Notes: generated by a model from the sequence alone, not told the origin. Positions 48,646-59,126 are shown, counted from the whole stretch's first letter. The stretch: 63,928 nucleotides of DNA, filler included, from Hyphochytrium catenoides (GCA_900088475.1; 6 parts of 6 records of this genome joined end to end with filler, not necessarily neighbours in it); one strand, 5' to 3'. Numbers and translations: made by a program.

Positions 48646-51098
48646 GTTGTGGGATCTCGGCATGGATGAAGAAGTGGCTCAACCGGTAGCTTTGGTCACC
48701 AATGTACCTGACCAAAAGACGGGCACTGCTGACGCCTTTGAGGCACTAGTCATACGTGAACAGCTGCATCTTCGGACTTACTTTTCCTTCTTCCTTCAGC
48801 GGTAGGAAGTTTCTCGTGCCGTTCTCTCCCGCTGTATCTCTTGTGCATGCTGTACTTTCTTTTGAACGAGTCCATTATTATCGGTCTGCTTAGAGGATGT
48901 CTCTTATTAGCCTGACCGTTCTGCCTACCCTTTCACTCTCTCTTGTTGGCAGGTTGCGATGATGTGACTTGTAGCCTTAGGCTCGGGCGGCCTTCTTGCA
49001 ACGCATGTCCGGCCATCTTTATGTAGGTAAGGAGCAACTGGTTGGCGGCTGGCGCGCTCAGGGTTACAGCAGAAGGGTACAAGCAACCGCTGCAGAGGAG
49101 TCCAGGAAGAGAATGCAAAGAGGAAGAGGACAACAAGAAATGATAGCAAGACGCACAGAGCCACAAGATGTTCTCTCTCTCTCTCTCTCTATTCTTTCCC
49201 TCCCGTCCATCTCATGCTCTTTCGCTTTTCTCTTTCCTATTATCTCTTCTTGGCCCTCGGCTGGGCTTTATGCTACTTTGGTCGGACGATAGCTCTCTCT
49301 TCTATATATCATAGTAGACACTATGACTCGTGTTCGTCGTCTTCTAATTCATCACTTAATGTAAGAAGAGTTATCAGCCCAACAGAGCGCGAGGAGCTCT
49401 TAGTAGGAAAGATCTGGGGCTTGTCTGCTGACGGTCAGGCTAAGCTGTTGCCGCCGCTTCTCTACTATATATAGACTTCTATGCACGTAGTAATGAGACC
49501 TCTGCAGTCTCCAAAGCAAGCGCAAAACGAGATGTAGGTGACCGCATAAGAGGAAGTCACCACGACAAGAGTGTCCTGCAAGAGTGAGAGAAACTCTTTG
49601 ACAGCGATGTATCCTCCAAAGGTCACACTAATGTCTTTGAGAGTTACCGCTGGGCATGCGGATGTGGAGCTTTCCCTTACAACCGCTCTCTCCACTCCTA
49701 ACCCTGACCTGTAGAAAGGGGAGGAGCTTACTCCAGTCAGTTGCCTTTGCTGCTTATCGATCACGCTCTGCCTCTGTCCTTTCAGGATGCCCGTTATTTA
49801 AGATAGCGCTCCGAGAGATCCATCGCTATCTTTGCCTTGGTGATCCATTCTACCATCGCCATAAGAGATGCCCTTTCTGGCTCCGACCACTTCCTCGAAG
49901 AGTACGCACTTTCCGAGAAACGTTGAGCGAACTGCATAGCCACGGGGCGGGAACCGGCCGCTTGGAAGGTCCTGTCAATGTGCATCTGTGTCTGCGGGAC
50001 GGCATCANNNNNNNNNNNNNNNNNNNNNNNNNNNNNNNNNNNNNNNNNNNNTTAATTAATTAANNNNNNNNNNNNNNNNNNNNNNNNNNNNNNNNNNNNN
50101 NNNNNNNTAGCCCCTTCGACCACTGCACAATCATTGTACAGCGCAGTACAACCGCGAACATATCACAGTTCTCAACAATATCATGTACTTTTCGCACAAG
50201 AGGGTGGCGTCTATGACCTAGATCCAACAAAAAAAAGAACGTACCACACCTAGCTACAAGACAAGGTGCGCTATCTCTCGGCACACGCGTCGGTACGTTG
50301 TTCTCCTCAAACGGAACAGGCCAGAAGCCCTCAATAATACGTACACACCACATCGAAAGCAACATGGATGAGCCACCAATACACAACCACCAACCAAAGG
50401 TCAGGTACCATTTGGCATCGCCGCCTGCCTGGGGCACCTCAACATTCCAGACATTAGGAAACTAGCCAAAGTCGCTGAAGGTATTATTCAGATCAACCAT
50501 GATGACGCTCAATTCTGCTCCGGATGCCTCTAGGCAAACTCACACGCCCCGCTGTAGGTTCCACAAGAAAGCGACTCCCAGTGCTTCAAGACCCCTGGAG
50601 CTAGTTCACTCCGATGTGGGAGTTGTCAAATCCCTTAGCATAGGAGGGCACCGCTACTATGTTGTCTTCGTAGATGATCACACCCGGCGGACTTTTCTCT
50701 ACTTGATTATGAGTCTGAAGATGAAGTGATTACTCACCTGGACACGTTTGTGCGACAAGCGGAACGACAAACTGGACGTAAAATCACCACATAGCTTGCC
50801 CTCAGACTCCAACACCTCCCCGCAGCTCGAACTCCCTATTATGAAGGGTCAAAGCTGAACCTTCAACAAAATCCAGAAAATTCGAAGAAGCGATCGAGGA
50901 GGAAAATACTGCCCAGAAGCCATAAAGGAGTACTGCAAAGCACGTGGAATGAACTCACAGCGCCGTACTCACCAGCACAGAATGGCGTCGCTGAACGTAG
51001 TGTTGAACTGTGATCGACGTTGAAATCAAAAGTGTACAGCGGACGACGCAGAGGGGAAGAAGCCCTGGTATATAAACAAAAACGGAGATTAGTCAAGC

Positions 51099-51179
51099 GT
51101 ACGTTTGGTGTATGGTGCATACTGGTTAGGGTGTCGGCATCAAAGACAGAGGTCCTGGGTTCGAATCCTGGAGCATATA
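51099..51179 (+). ncRNA. tRNA-like Pol III unit in the 5' LTR of TRIM 1
   Basis: TATATAAA at 51069 (-30); acceptor 5' strand GTACGTT; A-box-like TGGTGTATGG; B box GGTTCGAATCC; TTTT downstream; abnormal anticodon arm. Confidence 0.75.
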
Positions 51180-51528
51180 AAACTTTTCTCCGGTATATCC
51201 AGACACCCCCCAATATTAATTAAAGTGCCCCTCCATCCAATGATAAAATCTAACATGGTGTGGTAGCTTTGTTAAGTGCTCACCATCCAATGATAAAATC
51301 TAACGTGGTGTACGCTCAGAGCGATTTAGCTCGGGCAATATAGTGAGCCATTCGGTTCTGTGACCACGGATGACCATCACAGTTCCATTTAAATCTAGAG
51401 CTTACAGAGTTCCCTAGATTCCGGGGGAGTGTTGAACTGTGATCGACGTTGAAACCAAAAAGTGTACAGCGGACGACGTAGAGGGGAAGAACCCCTGGTA
51501 TATAAACAAGAACGAAGATTAGTCAAGG

Positions 51529-51609
51529 GTACGTTTAGTGTATCGTGCATACTGGTTAGGGTGTCGGCATCAAAGACAGAGGTCCTGGGTTCGAATCCCG
51601 GAGCTTACG
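51529..51609 (+). ncRNA. tRNA-like Pol III unit in the 3' LTR of TRIM 1
   Basis: Same unit with T arm CTGGG-TTCGAAT-CCCGG. Confidence 0.75.
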
Positions 51610-52344
51610 AAACTTTTCTCCGGTATATCCAGACAATCACAATATTTCTGATTTAAGTGCTTACCATCCAATGATGATAACTCTAACACGTAGTCTACAG
51701 CGCAGTCTTGTGGAGTCCGCTCGCTGCCTGCTCCGCGCTGCAAAACTTCCCTTATCGTTTCGTCGAGAAGCCGTTAAAACAGCAGCTCACCTTGGAAGCA
51801 TGTATCCCACCCCAGCACTTACAAGGACAACACACCCTATAAAATGTGGGAGGGTAAAAACCCTGGCTTGAGTCATCTGCGTGCTTTGGTTTTCAAGCTT
51901 ATGGTCTCATCCCTGACCAGGAACAGACCAAGATGGATGCTAAGGCTAAGTGGGTTATGCAGATCATTCAAAGGCGTATCGCTTATATGATCCACAGAAA
52001 AAGAGAATCATTGAAATATGATGTCGCATTGAACGAGAACCAGACTGGATACGTGGAAACATCACCTCCACCAGAGGATGTCGACATACTCTTTGAGATA
52101 CTAAATGAAGAAGCCCACGACGCGACTCCAGCTCTAGTCGAAGATCCAGAAACCTAATTAATAGATGGCCCCGGCGTCGCGGTAACAATTGACGTATCTG
52201 ACCCAGCCAACCTTGACAACACCGAGGGGTGTACGGAAGACGACACCAAGATGAAGAAGATGTTGAACTCTACAGAGCTAGATGGCAATGCCAGAAGCTT
52301 CCGTATGAGCACAATCTAGATTACACGATACAAAGGGACCGACT

Positions 52345-52591
52345 GGGTCTTGATAAATGATTGAGATTTCTCTGAATGACTGAGTCATGAGTCTGTCTGG
52401 TCTGCTTTCAAAATCTTTTGCTCGGCCCAGCTTCCCTCGTCTTCTCTCTCTCCTGTGCTGCTCCAGCGTTCTTCTGGAACTCTTCTCACATCTCTCTTTC
52501 CCATAACACAGGTGTACCCGTAACATCTATGTCCCTGAGAGCTTGGTGTGTATAGAGAGTGACTACTGTACTACTGACAACGAACATTGTA
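52345..52591 (-). mobile_element. LTR-like repeat (family A) after the RNase H end of copia element 2; inverted homologue at 57869-58440
   Basis: Shares GTAGTCACTCTCTATACACAC...GTTACGGGTACACCTGTGTTATGGGAA...GGCCGAGCAAAAGAT with 57869-58440. A purine tract GAAGGGGA precedes it on the minus strand. Confidence 0.7.
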
Positions 52592-53326
52592 TCCCCTTCA
52601 TACCTAGCTTCTCTGGATCATCAGGGTGGCGGTCGAATTAACTTACCTAATTGTCGGTCTCACTCACTCTCTCCTCCTCAGACGAAGCTAGGTGGTTAGT
52701 GGCAAGAGTACTGATACTAGGCGGGAGCACTCCAAGGTGAGGACGACGCAGTCCGAAAGAGAGGAGCAGGTAAAGGCTTGGTGAGGCAATCGGCCACCAT
52801 AGCTGCACAGGGAGTATAGACCAGCTTAATTCTCCCAATGATTACCTTCTCTTGCACGACACAGTGCTTTTGACATCCAAAGTCTTTGAGCTTTCGTCGT
52901 GAAGGAGCAGAGGACAATCGCGCTCTGCTTGTCCTGGTTAATAGGAATGGGCAGCTGGTTGAAGAGTAGCCGAGCTAGCCCAGGAACACACTGAAGTGCT
53001 CTGCGACCTGGCATCCGGACCAAAGAGAGACGCACTCCGCTTCCGTTGTTGACGACGCTCTGAGAGATTGTTTCTTTGACTTCCATGCAAAAGCACCGCC
53101 GTTGAGGCGCAATAAATAGCCTGTGATAGACTTGCGGTCAGCTGGGTGACTAGCCCAATCAGCATCAGCCTGGACAAAGAGTTGAATAGGGGAGGGTATC
53201 TCCCCCCAGACACAAGAAGTAGTCTTGGGTGGCCTTCAGGTAGGTGAAGATACGTTTGACAGCCTCGCAGTGTACGTGGCGGAAGGTAGTGACGTGTTGG
53301 CTCACAGCTTATACCGCATAAGATAT

Positions 53327-54166
53327 ACAATACAGCAGGCAAGCCTGAGGGCTCACCCTTTTAGATAGGGTTAATCCAGCCTTGACCAGCAGGATTATTT
53401 GTACGAGTACATTGTACTTGCTCAAGCAGGATTAGACCAGTGTACTCCGTTATTATTAGATTAGAGCATCTTTTAGAGACTATTATTCGCAGCAAATCGA
53501 GATTTGATGAATAATAACCGATTATAGTTGTTTTTATTTGGAATAGTAACCGGGTATATTTGTTTTATAGCAATAGCCGGTAGGTCTAATAACAGCTATA
53601 TAAATACAACTACAACAGGGAGGAGTTGGAGCGGATTTGGTTCCTCAGTATAGTATGGGGAATAGAGAGAAGCGGAAACGACTACAGAGTACAGCGTCAA
53701 AAAGAACTGAGAGTACGATTAGACTATACAGTACCGGAACCTGCCCCCTTTCGTGCAACAGATACACCCTTTGGCTTGTTTTGAGAGTGAACTAACCCAA
53801 AGACGAACAATATGCTTTTGATAAATCGGTTATTTGGTGATTACAAAAACTGACCAATCACAGAATTAACGACATTTTGCATTTGTTTTCAAAGTCCTTT
53901 TGGCTTCTTTTCGCCTCCCTTTCATGTTCCTATTAACGTAAGCACTTACATTTATTCGAACCGAGAAAGCTTATCTAAATGGTGATTGGAAGCAAATCAT
54001 GAATTTACGTCAACCTCAGAATTGTGCTGGTCCCGGGGTACGGTTTACTACCTGTGAACAGACAGACAGACAGACAGACAGACAGACGCGGACGACAAAT
54101 CGGAAAAATTCTGCACCGCCTGACGCAAAAACCTAAACAAAAAAGCTTCGCCCTTCGGGCTCGCCA
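53327..54166. mobile_element. ~840-bp non-autonomous insertion without TSD; Helitron/Helentron-like
   Basis: Removing it restores copia CCT GAT|ATA TCT TAT (PD|ISY). Imperfect palindromic subterminal inverted repeats at 53338-53352 and 54150-54165; (ACAG)n at ~54058-54087. Confidence 0.65.
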
Positions 54167-55823
54167 ATCAGGCCGCGTGCACACCATGACGTACAGCAAG
54201 GAACCCACTGCTTGACGATAAGGGTGCGAGCCAGCCGGTCAACAGCGTCATCATCAGAAAGAGGAATGCGTAGAAGCTTTGGGCAAGTACGTCTTAGGCA
54301 CCGCCCGAATAGGATTGGGGTAGGCATCAAGTAGGTTGAAGCACTCCAAGATCTCGTTATTATACTTTGACTGTCGAAGGTATATCTTCCTAGCAGCTCG
54401 ATCCCGCTTTACTTGAATGCCCAAGTACTACTCTAACTCCCCCAGATCGGTGATGGAGAAACGAGCAGACAGCATAGTCTTGAGACCTGCAATTTGCTCG
54501 GTGGTGTGGGAGCAAAGAGGCGCATGTCGTCAACGAAGGCGCCGACGATCTCAAGGTGGTCCTCAGGTCTCGAAGAGTGGCGCTTGACGTATACCCCAAA
54601 GTCACAAACGCTGCGCTGGAACCCTTGCTCAATCAGATAATGGTGCATCGTGTCATTCCACATCTTGGGGCTCTGGCGGAGACCATATATCGACTTCTTC
54701 AGCTTCCAGAGGTGATCTTCCTTCCTTCCTGTCCAGGGGTTGCAACAAAGCCCAATGGCTGACGCATGTACACCTGCTCGTCAAGATTGCCGTTCAGGAA
54801 GGTGGTCTTGATATCGACGTGATCACTTCTAGATTCAGTGTGGCGGCGAGCGAGAGAAGGCAGCGCACAGTGTCATGCCCTATTACTGGAGCAAAGACCT
54901 CGCTAAAGTCAATACCTTGCTTCTGTCGATTGCCAAGAGCGTCTAGACGTGCCTTGTACTTGTCCGCTGAGCCATCGCTATGCAACTTGACCCTAAAGAC
55001 TCATTGAGAGCCGATGACATGAGCGCCGGGGGTGGGGGGCACTAGATCGTAAACCTCATGGACTGCGTTGATGTAAGCTCTGAGGTAATGGCGGCTAGCC
55101 ATTCTGTGGCATGAGGTCTAGAGAGTGCCTCGCGGACTGTTTTCGGTTCAGAGCATGCAGAAGATTAGCCTGGCCTATTGGAAAAGAGAGAGAGTCTTCC
55201 CGTAGCAGTCTATCACGACCACGAGTGAGGGACCGAGTGGAGAAGTGATTGTGGTCGGAGAGGAAGGAGAAGAAGAAGCTGCCGGATGATCTTCATCTTC
55301 GCCAAGCTCGCTCGTCTCCGTTCCACCAGCAACGCTGCTCTCTGGCTCCGGCCCCAGAAAGTCGTCGGTGGGCTCCTCTGGACTTGCTTCGTCAGCAGAA
55401 GGTGCATTTTCTTTTTCTGCTTGTCTCGCTGCACTCGGTTCCCCACCTAGTTGCCCTGCTTCAGCGGCAGTTGCTTCCTCGTTCCCTATGTTGGGAAACA
55501 AAGAGACATAGTCATAATGTTGGTGCCTTTTTGCCTGTTTGAGTAGAAAGGTTCCAGAGCGAGACTCGTCGATAACCACATCACGCCGCACAGANNNNNN
55601 NNNNNNNNNNNNNNNNNNNNNAAGACGCGTAGGTGACCAACATCAGGCGGCTTGCCGTACCACTTCTCATAGGGGGTAGCGCCATCGAGTGAAGCAGTAG
55701 TAGGACAGCGATTGATCACATGAACTGCGGAGGCCAATGCATCTGCCCAAAAGAGGCTAGGCGGGTCAGTAGCAATGAGAAGGCATCTCGTCGCCTGCAT
55801 GACAGTTTAGTATGCACCATATC

Positions 55824-55841
55824 AAACAGGTTATGGGCCCA
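55824..55841 (+). mobile_element. LTR end (AACA) plus half-tRNA-iMet-type PBS GGTTATGGGCCCA from another copia-type insertion remnant
   Basis: The sequence is complementary to the tRNA-iMet anticodon arm, the PBS type used by Drosophila copia. Confidence 0.6.
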
Positions 55842-55996
55842 CGCGTCCCCCGGGACTCGGAAACTTGTTCTGAGGCCTCTGAACCAACTACTGGACCATT
55901 GCGATCCCGACCGACACCAAGATCAAGTAGTAGTCATTATCGCATCCACCACTGCTAAGTCCGGCCACTTGGATGCCAGGACAACGCTGGAGATGG

Positions 55997-56317
55997 TGTT
56001 GGAGTCTGAGGCACAGCTATGTGGACTACAAGCTGCCAAGCTTAACTACCCAAGTTTCAGCTCCAAACTCCCAGTAGAAGCCGAGATATGAAGCAAACGA
56101 AATATCCCTGTTTATATCTATGGCTTATGGTCATTACCCCGGAATACCTTCAGGACTGACTATTCCAGACAGTTATATCTCTATAACTCCATATCTTAGA
56201 CTTTATTAGGAATAGTTGGAATAGTCAGAATAGCTCTAGATTATGGGACCCCAGTTGGGCTTAAGTTGAGCACTCTCATCTAATGACATTGTCCAATCAT
56301 CCCATACAAATCCAACA
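55997..56317 (-). mobile_element. LTR family B copy (TGTTGG...TCCAACA); homologue at 58061-58382 and end fragment at ~50787-50813
   Basis: ~320-bp inverted near-identity with 58061-58382; TG...CA termini. Confidence 0.85.
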
Positions 56318-56595
56318 TTCTCATCCAGCCTTCACGGCACTCGTTGCTAGAGGGGGAATAAGCAGGTATAGGAGAGTGCAGGACCCCCCGGCGAGAACAC
56401 ACTCTGCGAGCCCAGCACTGTTAACGAACTCCCCCCGCGATCGGAGCGTATCTCCCTCACGCGCTCACCCCTCGGGTTCTCCATGAAAGAATGGGCTCCT
56501 TCAACTTAGCTTCTGCTTCTCCTTTGCTCCGAAGAAATTGCACAAAGCACCTCCGAGAGTAATCATCCACCACGAGCAGAAGATGTACTAGCCTT

Positions 56596-57197
56596 TGNNN
56601 NNNNNNNNNNNNNNNNNNNNNNNNNNNNNNNNNNNNNNNNNNNNNNNNNNNNNNNNNNNNNNNNNNNNNNNNNNNNNNNNNNNNNNNNNNNNNNNNNNNN
56701 NNNNNNNNNNACACCAAACGCACCCTTGACTAATCTCCGTTTTTGTTTATATACCAGGGACTTTCCCCTCTGCGTCGTCCGCTTTACACTGTTTGTTTCA
56801 ACGTCAATCACAGTTCAACACTCCCCCAGATTTTGGAGACCTCTGTAAGCTCTAGATCCAAATGGAACTGTGATGGTCATCCGTGGTCACAGAACCGAAT
56901 GGCTCACTATATTGCCCGTGTTAAATCGCTCGAAGCGTACACCATGTTAGATTTTATCATTTGGTGGTGGGCACTTTGAATTAATATTGGGAGGTGTCTG
57001 GATATACCAGACAAAAGTTTTGTACGCTCCGGATTCAAACCCAGGACCTCTGTCTTTGATGCCGACACCCTAACCAGTATGCACGATACACCAAACGTAC
57101 ACTTGACCAATCTCCGTTTTGATTATATACCAGGGGTTCTTCCCCTCTGCGTCGTCCGCTGTACACTTTTGGTTTCAACGTCGATCAGAGTTCAACA
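56596..57197 (-). mobile_element. TRIM copy 2 (5' LTR 57197-56945, PBS 56944-56934, PPT 56827-56821, 3' LTR 56820-56596 partly in a gap)
   Basis: Same family as 51001-51688; TSD GCCTT at 56591-56595 and 57198-57202. Confidence 0.9.
57021..57100 (-). ncRNA. tRNA-like unit in the TRIM 2 5' LTR with intact acceptor stem GTACGTT/AGCGTAC and discriminator A
   Basis: 7-bp acceptor pairing, T arm, AAACTTTT trailer and upstream TATATAA. Confidence 0.75.
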
Positions 57198-57299
57198 GCC
57201 TTGATAGGTACGAGTATTGACAATGCCAACGTCGGCGTGCAGAAGTTCCAGCAAGCTTGTTGTCTTACGGGACTGAGCGTGGTAAGGCTTACGAGTTAG

Positions 57300-57622
57300 C
57301 CTCTAGATTCAAATCGAACTGTGATGGTCAACCGTGGTCCCAGAACCGAGTGGCTCAGTTAAATCGCTCAGAGCCTACACCATGGTCTATTTACTATCAT
57401 GTGGTTGGTGGTGTGCACTGTGGATTGATACTGGGGGGTTGTTTGAATATATCGGAGAAAAGGTTTGTACTACGCTCCGGGATTCGAATCCAGGACCTCT
57501 ATTTGATGCCGACACCTTAACCAGCAGTATGTACCCATACACCAGACGTACCCTTTAACTAATCTCCATTTTGTTCATATACTGGGGCTTTTTCACCTCG
57601 GCGTCGTCCGCTGTACACTTTT
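57300..57622 (-). mobile_element. Older truncated TRIM copy 3 (partial LTR with tRNA-like unit, PBS TGGTGTAGGCTC, internal region)
   Basis: Diverged homology to copies 1 and 2. Confidence 0.85.
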
Positions 57623-57868
57623 GCTATCTTAGCTCTTGAGACCCGAGGGTGACTTAAGATGCTCTCAGTTCCAGACTCTGCCTCGCAAGAGGGAGAATGC
57701 GCAAAAACAAGTGTTTTAGAGGTCTGATAAGCAGGTAATAATCAGAGGGAAGTCATCATGGGAACTGCAAAACAGTAACTAGATCTTGTAGACTTCAAGA
57801 CACACTTACTATTAGATCCTAGAAGGAGTTTATAGGGTTACTGTACCGTATGGTATAAGAAGTATCTG

Positions 57869-58440
57869 ATGTTGAGTGCTACAATGTTCAATGTAGTCAC
57901 TCTCTATACACACCTAGCTCTCCAGGACATAGACGTTACGGGTACACCTGTGTTATGGGAATGAGGGATATGAGAAAAATACCCAGAACACAGGAACAGC
58001 ACAGCAGAGAGAGATAATGAGGGAAACTGGGGCCGAGCAAAAGATCTCGAGACCGAGACTTTTTGGATATATGGGATGATTGGACAATGTCATTAGATGA
58101 GAGTGCTCGACTTATAAGCCCAACTGGGGTCCCATAAACTAGAGCTATTCTGACTATGCCAACTATTCCTAATAAACCCGAAGATATTCAGTCATAGAGA
58201 AATCCCTGTCTAGAACAGTCAGTCCTGAAGGTATTCCGGGGTACTGACCATAAGCCATAGATATAAACAGGGACATTTCGTTTGCTTCATATCTCGGCTT
58301 CTACTGGGAGTTTAGAGCTGAAACTTGGGTAGTTAAGCTTGCCAGCTTGTAGTCCACATAGCTGTGCCCTCAGACTCCAACAGACTCTCAGCACTCAGCC
58401 ATCATTCAGTGAAATCTCAATCACATAAATACCAAATACA
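57869..58440 (+). mobile_element. Family A LTR interrupted by a solo family B LTR (58061-58382, GACT duplicated at the flanks)
   Basis: Family A homology resumes after 58382; GACT is present on both sides. Confidence 0.75.
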
Positions 58441-59126
58441 GACATCAATGCCCAGTCTTAAGGGTAAGGGTACCAATTCTGAACCGGGTACCAATTGCGA
58501 AACACTGGATGTTGCATAAGCTCATTTAGCCCATAGAAATACGGTACTAACCGTTGATTGACGCGGCGAGTATGAAATGGAAGCGATTCGTCCGTTATCA
58601 TCGTCGTTCTGATCTCCCCGCTGCTCTTTCGTTCTCCTTTTCATCACCTTATTCCCGATGACTAATCTCCTTCCCTCGCTCCTTCCTCGTCCTGTCCTCT
58701 ACCTTCTTCTCCTTCGTCGTTATTATGCAATTGATCATCTTNNNNNNNNNNNNNNNNNNNNNNNNNNNNNNNNNNNNNNNNNNNNTTAATTAATTAANNN
58801 NNNNNNNNNNNNNNNNNNNNNNNNNNNNNNNNNNNNNNNNNAGAGAGAGAAAGAGAGAGAGGTGAGGCAAAGAGAACGAGAACGAGAACAAGACGCAAAG
58901 AACAATGACCGGCAGTGCTTCATAGAACAGAAAGCGAGAGACAAAGTATATAGAGAGAATAGAGAGGAGAGAGGAAGAGAAGAAGAGAAAGAGAGCGACA
59001 GAGGAAGGAAAGAGAGGAAAGGGAATGGAAGAAAGGAAACCAGAAAGAGAGAGCGTAAGAGAGAGAGAGAGAGAAAGAAAGAGAGAGAGAGCAGCAAAGC
59101 TGGCTCCCAGATGGAAAAGGCTCCTC

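What the first reader, a model, noticed from the sequence alone, without database searches (positions are those of the whole stretch)
51001..57622. Miniature LTR retrotransposon that may encode its own reverse-transcription primer tRNA
Seen: each LTR of this TRIM family holds an ~81-nt tRNA-like unit. In the best copy (57100-57021, minus) it ends ...CCGGAGCGTAC-A followed by AAACTTTT. Trimming and CCA addition would give ...GAGCGTACACCA. The PBS immediately after the 5' LTR is TGGTGTACGCTC (51306-51317), an exact 12-nt complement; copy 2 has an 11-nt match at 56944-56934 and copy 3 has one mismatch. Established: LTR elements normally borrow a host tRNA as primer, and TRIMs with Pol III RNA-derived LTRs exist (5S in Cassandra, tRNA-like in Helenus). 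Inference: the LTR unit keeps its acceptor and T arms but has a degenerate anticodon arm, as expected for a dedicated non-translating primer supplied in cis. I do not know whether this self-complementarity has already been reported.
Basis: partly seen in the sequence, partly recalled or inferred. Interest (0 to 1): 0.92.

Follow-up and report, generated by a model that had tools for sequence, protein, structure and literature searches.

The report
TRIM whose PBS matches its own LTR
A tiny, very abundant non-coding retrotransposon carries a tRNA-like gene in each repeat, and its reverse-transcription start site is an exact complement of that RNA's matured end, so it may supply its own primer; this could not be told apart from use of a matching host tRNA.

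Summary
The piece holds two complete TRIM insertions with 5-bp target duplications and one fragment. Each LTR (about 254 bp) has a TATA box, an 81-nt tRNA-like unit (7-bp acceptor stem, canonical T arm and B box, degenerate middle) and a TTTT run.

The site just after the 5' LTR, TGGTGTACGCTC, complements the unit's last 9 bases plus CCA. Contigs from public runs of the same organism show hundreds of family pieces. In the family consensus the match is 14 nt (11 templated plus CCA), with no variant at 5% or more on either side.

The element meets every structural criterion of Helenus (Kojima 2024), but its strings are absent from that paper's consensus set. That paper looked for exactly this complementarity and reported none.

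The functional reading is untested. I could not reach the host genome's tRNA set, a partner Copia PBS, diverged subfamilies or RNA data. The invariant family gives no covariation.

My odds are about 0.42 that an LTR-type tRNA-like RNA is the primer and about 0.40 that a host tRNA with the same 3' end primes it. Other readings share the rest. It is a new variant of a known kind and a clear, testable lead.

The parts
50996..51000 (+). Copy 1 target-site duplication, left (CGTAG)
   Evidence: Direct reading and script. The same pentamer stands at 51689-51693, and the flanks join into one Copia integrase reading frame.
51001..51255 (+). Copy 1 5' LTR (TGTTGAAC...ATCTAACA), about 96% identical to the family consensus (measured over 51001-51305)
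51069..51076 (+). TATATAAA box, 23 nt upstream of the first base of the unit; kept or nearly kept in all five LTR copies
   Evidence: direct reading
51099..51179 (+). tRNA-like unit in the copy 1 5' LTR (3' strand decayed to GAGCATATA); TTTT at 51184-51187
51256..51305 (+). Copy-specific partial duplication: TGGTGT, then 10 nt, then a repeat of the last 34 nt of the LTR
51306..51317 (+). Copy 1 primer-binding site TGGTGTACGCTC
51306..51429 (+). Copy 1 internal region (124 nt, no ORF); polypurine tract GGGGGAG at 51423-51429
51430..51688 (+). Copy 1 3' LTR (unit 51529-51609, TTTT 51614-51617)
51689..51693 (+). Copy 1 target-site duplication, right (CGTAG)
56591..56595 (-). Copy 2 target-site duplication (GCCTT), 3' side of the element
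   Evidence: loose ends show the uninterrupted host sequence in other copies.
56596..56820 (-). Copy 2 3' LTR; bases 56598-56710 are an assembly gap (N)
   Evidence: (I9, I12, I14)
56821..56944 (-). Copy 2 internal region; polypurine tract at 56821-56827; PBS at 56933-56944 (TGGTGTACGCTT here, ...CTC in the family; the 14-nt match spans 56931-56944)
56945..57197 (-). Copy 2 5' LTR, 96.4% identical to the family consensus
57021..57100 (-). Best-kept tRNA-like unit: acceptor GTACGTT/AGCGTAC, T loop, discriminator A at 57021, trailer AAAC, TTTT at 57013-57016
57198..57202 (-). Copy 2 target-site duplication (GCCTT), 5' side of the element
57301..57622 (-). Copy 3, a truncated fragment: part of the internal region, PBS 57371-57382 (TGGTGTAGGCTC), and an LTR 57383-57622 lacking its first ~25 nt; unit 57466-57551. 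87.6% identical to the consensus.

Best explanation
This is a high-copy, non-coding Helenus-type TRIM: a Copia-mobilised miniature LTR retrotransposon with a Pol III tRNA-like unit in each LTR.

Most likely working model; every step in it is inferred, none was observed:
1. Transcription starts about 23-30 nt downstream of the LTR's TATA box, at the first base of the unit.
2. Transcripts that stop at the weak TTTT, or that RNase Z cuts after discriminator A, give an 81-nt tRNA-like RNA.
3. That RNA's intact acceptor/T-arm minihelix lets the CCA-adding enzyme extend it to ...CGGAGCGUACACCA.
4. Transcripts that read through to the TTTT of the 3' LTR are the genomic RNA, so the repeated (R) region would be the unit itself.
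5. The CCA-tailed RNA anneals to the 14-nt site directly after the 5' LTR and primes minus-strand synthesis by the reverse transcriptase of a Copia partner.

What is shown: the element's anatomy, its target duplications, its abundance, and the exact family-wide complementarity.
For: - Anatomy and 5-bp target duplications.
- B box GGTTCGAATCC present in all four units (exact in two, one mismatch in two) against 0.13 hits expected by chance.
- ARAGORN calls a tRNA-like fold with an 8-bp acceptor stem and a T arm on the family-corrected copy.
- The PBS complements the unit's 3' end plus CCA over 12 nt in copy 1 and 14 nt in the family consensus. The duplex energy is -28.3 kcal/mol.
- The match includes the discriminator base, and the PBS starts with TGG, the mark of a CCA-ended primer.
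- The only RNA gene seen with this 3' end is the LTR unit itself. It stands in hundreds of copies, each with a TATA box, a B box and a terminator.
- A survey of Helenus families in fungi, animals and a plant found no case where the unit and the PBS match by accident of origin (PMC10886601), so a coincidence of source tRNA and primer tRNA is rare.
- From established knowledge: RNase Z and the CCA-adding enzyme act on acceptor/T-arm minihelices of non-tRNAs such as mascRNA. The T arm here even gives a local match to the Rfam mascRNA model.
Against: - There is no RNA evidence of any kind.
- The host tRNA set, and the PBS of any autonomous partner, could not be examined. A host tRNA ending CGGAGCGTACA is therefore not excluded, and it needs no new mechanism.
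- Complementarity stops after 14 nt although the unit could offer 18 or more.
- The raw copies are not called tRNA by ARAGORN or Rfam.
- The unit's fold is not better than that of shuffled sequences.
- There is no covariation.
- Other Helenus units also keep their acceptor and T arms without matching their PBS, so that conservation is not specific evidence.
- T-run depletion on the sense strand is not significant.
Confidence: 0.42

Rival explanations
1. Ordinary host-tRNA priming. A canonical host tRNA ending ...CGGAGCGUACA-CCA primes both the TRIM and its Copia partner. The LTR unit is a decayed copy of that same tRNA. One route is template switching onto the primer tRNA packaged in the particle, which would insert it in sense orientation. 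So the PBS and the unit match only through common descent.
For: - This is the known mechanism for LTR elements.
- Helenus PBSs normally match host tRNAs and resemble those of Copia or Gypsy partners (PMC10886601).
- A PBS starting with TGG fits any CCA-ended tRNA.
- Helenus units in general keep their acceptor stems.
- Some contigs match only the unit and diverge at both of its borders (loose ends at 57104 and 57013). These could be stand-alone genes.
Against: - No such tRNA was seen. It is hypothetical here.
- The unit is too diverged from tRNAs to be found by the Rfam tRNA model, yet its last 11 bases would have to be untouched.
- The LTR has AAAC, not CCA, after the discriminator, so it is not a simple copy of a mature tRNA.
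- The Helenus survey reported no such coincidence in any family.
Confidence: 0.4
2. Pairing in cis, without a separate primer. The unit's 3' strand in the 5' part of the genomic RNA pairs with the PBS. This would act either as Tf1-type self-priming after a cut, or as a structure that masks or regulates the PBS.
For: - There are 11 templated complementary bases about 125 nt apart on the same RNA.
- Self-priming with an 11-nt 5' segment is established for the Tf1/sushi elements of fungi (established knowledge).
Against: - The TGG directly after the LTR is unexplained, because the LTR has AAA where CCA would be needed.
- The complementary segment is not at the predicted 5' end of the transcript.
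- Known self-primers are Gypsy-type elements, whereas this element has Copia-type 5-bp duplications.
Confidence: 0.06
3. The LTR-derived RNA binds the PBS but does not prime. For example, 3' fragments of the tRNA-like RNA could act like the 3'-tRFs that block PBS use. Alternatively, the match is a leftover of a rearrangement between PBS-like and LTR sequences and has no present function.
For: - 3'-tRFs that target the PBS are known in mammals (papers listed).
- A PBS-like string (9 of 11 bases) also sits at positions 8-18 of the unit, and copy 1 carries a PBS/LTR-end duplication. Rearrangements around the PBS therefore do occur.
Against: - Self-inhibition would not favour a family that reached hundreds of copies.
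- The match sits exactly at the processed 3' end, including the discriminator.
Confidence: 0.07

Closest known systems
Helenus (TRIMp3) of Pucciniales and other fungi, Kojima 2024, PMC10886601
   Same: - Two LTRs of about 254 bp and a 124-bp non-coding interior.
- A tRNA-like unit with a B box and a T-run terminator in each LTR.
- PBS and polypurine tract, 5-bp target duplication, and a Copia context.
- LTR ends TGTTGAA...TCTAACA, like several Puccinia families.
   Different: - Its strings are absent from the published consensus set.
- The PBS pairs with a 3' CCA end rather than the usual anticodon-loop type.
- The PBS complements the element's own LTR unit, which the paper states it never found.
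Cassandra (plant TRIM with 5S rRNA in its LTRs)
   Same: A TRIM with a Pol III gene copy in each LTR, high copy number, and a non-coding interior.
   Different: - The unit here is tRNA-like, not 5S; there is no 5S match in Rfam.
- From memory, Cassandra's PBS matches host initiator tRNA-Met. This was not tested here.
Tf1/sushi-type self-primed LTR elements
   Same: The element's own RNA carries about 11 nt complementary to the PBS, so no host tRNA would be needed.
   Different: - Tf1 uses the first 11 nt of its own mRNA after an RNase H cut, needs no CCA, and is a Gypsy-type coding element.
- Here the match needs added CCA, lies at the end of a tRNA-like unit, and the element is a non-coding Copia-type TRIM.
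mascRNA and other tRNA-like small RNAs that are cut by RNase P/Z and CCA-tailed
   Same: An acceptor/T-arm minihelix with a degenerate remainder. There is a local T-arm match to Rfam RF01684.
   Different: There is no overall similarity to the family (12.4 bits against a gathering score of 42.5), and processing is untested here.

Membership tests
Helenus / TRIMp3 | TRIM architecture: two short LTRs, total length under about 1.3 kb, no coding capacity | tested here: met
   Copy 1 is 688 bp (about 632 bp without its duplication). The LTRs are 254-259 bp and the interior is 124 bp, with only chance ORFs.
Helenus / TRIMp3 | tRNA-derived sequence with box A and box B in the LTR | tested here: met
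   - The B box is exact.
- A 7-bp acceptor stem and a T arm are present, and ARAGORN calls a tRNA-? on the family-corrected copy.
- Box A is only approximate (GTGCATACTGG).
- The Rfam tRNA model does not hit.
Helenus / TRIMp3 | PBS directly after the 5' LTR and a polypurine tract before the 3' LTR | tested here: met
   TGGTGTACGCTC follows ...CTAACA, and GGGGGAG precedes TGTTGAAC in copies 1 and 2.
Helenus / TRIMp3 | 5-bp target duplication (fungal/plant type) | tested here: met
   CGTAG for copy 1 and GCCTT for copy 2.
Helenus / TRIMp3 | Identity with a published family consensus (Data S1) | tested here: not met
   Eight element-specific strings of 8-14 nt (PBS start, LTR start, unit body and unit 3' end) gave no hit. 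Shorter strings hit only unrelated places or other families. The text search can miss strings broken by line wraps.
Canonical tRNA gene | Full cloverleaf with a 7-nt anticodon loop, recognised by tRNA models | tested here: not met
   - ARAGORN finds 0 genes in the raw sequence.
- The Rfam tRNA model gives no hit at E<=10, even on 120-nt stretches.
- ARAGORN on the corrected copy gives an 8-nt loop and the type '?'.
Tf1-type self-priming elements | PBS complementary to the first ~11 nt of the element's transcript | tested here: inconclusive
   The transcription start was not measured. The complementary segment lies about 70 nt downstream of the start predicted from the TATA box.
   No listed holder is on record as RNA; only DNA contigs could be laid.
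The scans and look-ups brought no further DNA of this organism.

The most novel reading that the evidence does not exclude
An LTR retrotransposon family that supplies its own reverse-transcription primer. One promoter in the LTR yields two products: a CCA-tailed tRNA-like RNA, and a read-through genomic RNA whose PBS that RNA anneals to. The element would then be independent of the host's tRNA pool.
Probability: 0.42. Interest if true: 0.85.

Novelty: new variant of a known kind. Interest (0 to 1): 0.62.

Why it matters
LTR retroelements and retroviruses are taken to borrow a host tRNA as primer; Tf1-type self-priming is the only established exception I know of.

The one paper on tRNA-bearing TRIMs raised the idea of an LTR-encoded primer and dismissed it, because no family showed the required complementarity. 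This family shows it exactly, across hundreds of copies.

If the LTR RNA is the primer, three things would follow:
- It would be a new priming strategy.
- It would explain why a TRIM might keep a Pol III unit in its LTR.
- It would bear on how PBS-directed host defences (3'-tRFs) could be evaded or mimicked.

If a host tRNA with the same end exists, the case is still useful. It would be the first Helenus family whose LTR unit can be traced to its own primer tRNA.

Tried and rejected
- Metagenome scan with CA plus the PBS: 120 loci. None resembles the TRIM and none has an LTR context; these are chance 14-mer hits. The scan is now spent.
- Scans of genome contigs and viral contigs with T arm plus acceptor end: no hits.
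- Trick of searching ORFs that run through the LTR, sense and antisense: no homologues.
- Copia RT fragment: no close relatives of similar length. The HMMER library gave only metagenome contigs (P0001 at 73%, P0005 at 58% amino-acid identity). Their loci L121 and L122 hold no TRIM or PBS and are about 70% identical in DNA.
- Exact look-up of a window ORF: not on record.
- The organism therefore stays unidentified (coded 'organism A'). The LTR termini suggest a rust-like basidiomycete.
- Full-text search for the PBS and primer strings found only unrelated PCR primers.
- No paper reporting an element-encoded tRNA primer was found.
- RNAalifold on the four units: no covariation and no cloverleaf consensus.
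- Single-sequence folds are no better than shuffles.
- T-run depletion on the sense strand, tested as a sign of Pol III read-through, is not significant.
- Rejected origin: capture of the primer tRNA by read-through of plus-strand strong-stop synthesis. That would place the tRNA antisense to the PBS, whereas here it is in sense.
- Rejected PBS look-alike at 54188 (- strand): it is the coding sequence for the Copia RT motif MVCTRPD.
- Depth differences along the LTR were not used, as the tool itself warns against doing so.


Full report
**What is there**

The piece 50108-58741 is a nest of retrotransposon remnants. Repeat finding and alignment define one small family present three times.

Copy 1 (+ strand, 51001-51688) is complete.
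- It is flanked by the duplication CGTAG. It splits a Copia integrase frame, which reads through cleanly once the element is removed.
- Its 5' LTR ends at 51255. A copy-specific 50-nt duplication follows (TGGTGT, 10 nt, then the last 34 nt of the LTR again), and then the primer-binding site at 51306-51317.
- The 124-nt interior has no meaningful ORF and ends in GGGGGAG. The 3' LTR is 51430-51688.

Copy 2 (- strand, 57197-56596) is also a complete insertion, flanked by GCCTT on both sides. Contigs from other genomic copies of the host element show the uninterrupted target (loose ends at 57197).

Copy 3 (- strand, 57622-57301) is a fragment: an LTR lacking its first ~25 nt, a PBS and two thirds of the interior.

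**The gaps, tested first**

Gap 56598-56710 lies inside the 3' LTR of copy 2.
- The two bases left of it are the LTR's terminal TG.
- The sequence right of it aligns to LTR positions about 1-110 in the same orientation.
- The target duplication brackets the whole element, so the two sides are very probably continuous.
- A full LTR needs about 142 missing bases, not 113.

Gap 55595-55621 lies in a Copia pol remnant on the minus strand, outside the TRIMs. The open frames on its two sides are in different phases. Relative P0001 aligns only to the right of it. Continuity there is therefore not shown, and it does not bear on the finding.

**The LTR unit**

Each LTR contains, in this order:
- a TATATAAA box (51069-51076 in copy 1);
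- 23 nt later, an 81-nt unit;
- then AAAC and TTTT.

In the best copy (window:57021-57100:-) bases 1-7 pair with bases 74-80 (GTACGTT/AGCGTAC, one G-U pair). A 5-bp stem closes a canonical TTCGAAT loop, and the discriminator is A. The B box GGTTCGAATCC is exact in two copies and has one mismatch in the other two, against 0.13 hits expected by chance.

The middle of the unit is not a normal D arm and anticodon arm.
- ARAGORN calls nothing in the raw sequence.
- The Rfam tRNA model gives nothing at E<=10, even on 120-nt stretches. Only local T-arm matches to the mascRNA and tmRNA models appear.
- Single-sequence folds are no better than shuffles.
- I corrected copy 2 to the family consensus by script, using the substitutions seen in all contigs. 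ARAGORN then calls an 83-nt tRNA-? with an 8-bp acceptor stem, a T arm, an 8-nt loop and a long extra arm.

So 'tRNA-like with an intact top half and a degenerate bottom half' is a fair description.

**The complementarity**

The PBS TGGTGTACGCTC is the exact complement of GAGCGTACA plus CCA.
- Copy 2 has one mismatch at the last base.
- Copy 3 has one mismatch in the PBS and a 3-nt insertion in the unit.
- The two LTR units of copy 1 have each lost the match through point changes.

What matters is the family, not these decayed copies.
- One public-run search found three DNA runs of the same, coded organism and two rhizosphere metagenomes with a small share.
- I laid their Logan contigs on 56826-57260 at 80% likeness. 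This gave 412, 175, 72 and 3 pieces, so the family is very abundant.
- Every contig reads G at 56933, which restores ...GCTC.
- The following CG is also complementary, so the family match is 14 nt: 11 templated bases plus CCA. The duplex energy is -28.3 kcal/mol.
- No variant reaching 5% was listed in 57018-57029 (the unit's 3' strand, discriminator and trailer) or in 56931-56944.
- A 411-nt rhizosphere contig, 90-95% alike, carries the same unit end and PBS.

A fixed-position 9- to 11-nt match has a chance probability of 4e-6 to 2e-7, so it is not accidental. Because both sides are invariant, covariation cannot be tested with this material.

**What is known**

Kojima 2024 (PMC10886601) defined Helenus.
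- These are TRIMs with a tRNA-derived unit in the LTRs, a PBS and a polypurine tract.
- Fungal and plant families have 5-bp duplications and fungal ones are linked to Copia partners. There are 113 families in rust fungi.
- Our element meets every structural criterion. Its LTR ends (TGTTGAA...TCTAACA) and its dimensions (254/124 bp) resemble several Puccinia families.
- Eight element-specific strings of 8-14 nt from our PBS, LTR start and unit are absent from the paper's consensus file. Shorter strings hit only unrelated places or other families. It is a family not described there.
- Most fungal Helenus PBSs pair with a tRNA anticodon loop. Ours begins with TGG, that is, it pairs with a CCA end.

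[quoted passage not shown] The present family is thus a counter-example at the level of sequence. Further text searches found no report of an element-encoded tRNA primer.

**How it most likely works (inferred)**

1. The TATA box predicts a transcript start at or near the first base of the unit.
2. A T4 run is a weak Pol III terminator in fungi (established knowledge). Some transcripts would end there and others would run on. There is no further T4 run on the sense strand until the one in the 3' LTR. That absence is not statistically significant.
3. Read-through transcripts would have the unit as their terminal repeat.
4. Short transcripts, or RNase Z cuts after the discriminator, would give a minihelix substrate for the CCA-adding enzyme, as for mascRNA.
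5. The product ends in exactly the 14 bases that pair with the PBS.

A single mispriming event would be enough to fix such a PBS. The plus-strand copy of the PBS is templated by the primer, and Kojima infers at least five primer switches among fungal Helenus.

**Why I cannot go further**

The rival needs no new mechanism: a host tRNA with the same 3' end, from which the unit descends.

Against the rival:
- The tRNA is hypothetical.
- The unit is otherwise too decayed for the Rfam tRNA model, yet its last 11 bases would have to be intact.
- The LTR has AAAC rather than CCA after the discriminator.
- No such coincidence was reported in any Helenus family.

For the rival:
- Parsimony.
- Helenus units in general keep their acceptor stems.
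- The match stops at 14 nt.
- A few contigs match only the unit and diverge at both of its borders. These might be stand-alone genes.

All attempts to reach the source genome, a partner element's PBS or diverged relatives failed. No listed holder is on record as RNA.

My odds are:
- 0.42 for an LTR-type tRNA-like RNA as primer;
- 0.40 for a host tRNA;
- about 0.06 for cis pairing or Tf1-like self-priming, which leaves the TGG unexplained;
- about 0.07 for binding without priming, or a rearrangement relic.

**Verdict**

It goes against the only published statement on the matter. The mechanism is plausible but unproven.

It is a new variant of a known kind (Helenus/TRIMp3). A simple genome-wide tRNA and PBS census would settle most of the question.

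Noticed in passing
51106-51116 (copy 1); same position in every LTR unit: Positions 8-18 of the unit (TGGTGTATGGT) repeat the PBS at 9 of 11 bases. The CCA-tailed 3' end could therefore pair with unit bases 8-16 instead of 1-7. The two folds are nearly isoenergetic (-26.5 against -25.9 kcal/mol). The origin and meaning are unknown.
   Followed up: partly
51256-51305: Copy 1 has a 50-nt duplication between the LTR end and the PBS. Its junction reads TGGTAGC, the first 7 nt of the initiator-tRNA 3'-end PBS of a Puccinia Helenus family (Data S1). This could be a trace of exchange with an element that uses that PBS, or it could be chance.
   Followed up: partly
55993-56306 (+), 58385-58070 (-), 52330-52566 (+), 57983-57893 (-), 50795-50822: A second, unrelated LTR family (starting TGTTGGAGTCTGAGG) is present as several fragments in both orientations (I1, I5, I15). 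Its ends and PBS could not be fixed.
   Followed up: partly
52650-56597 (-) and 50108-52157 (+): Two decayed Copia pol remnants with frameshifts and stops. The minus-strand one is 41-71% identical in protein to P0001 from a JGI metagenome. TRIM copies 1 and 2 both sit inside Copia integrase sequence.
   Followed up: partly
about 54058-54088: A (CAGA)n microsatellite lies inside an insertion of about 0.9 kb that separates the RT and RNase H parts of the minus-strand Copia remnant.
   Followed up: no
runs X4/X5: Two rhizosphere metagenome runs hold contigs 90-95% identical to the TRIM, including the unit end and the PBS. The host or a close relative therefore occurs in such samples.
   Followed up: no
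56917-56933 (- strand; family consensus): The PBS's 3' part CCGAG can pair with CTCGG 8 nt downstream. This small hairpin overlaps PBS positions 12-16 and may explain why complementarity to the unit stops at 14 nt.
   Followed up: no
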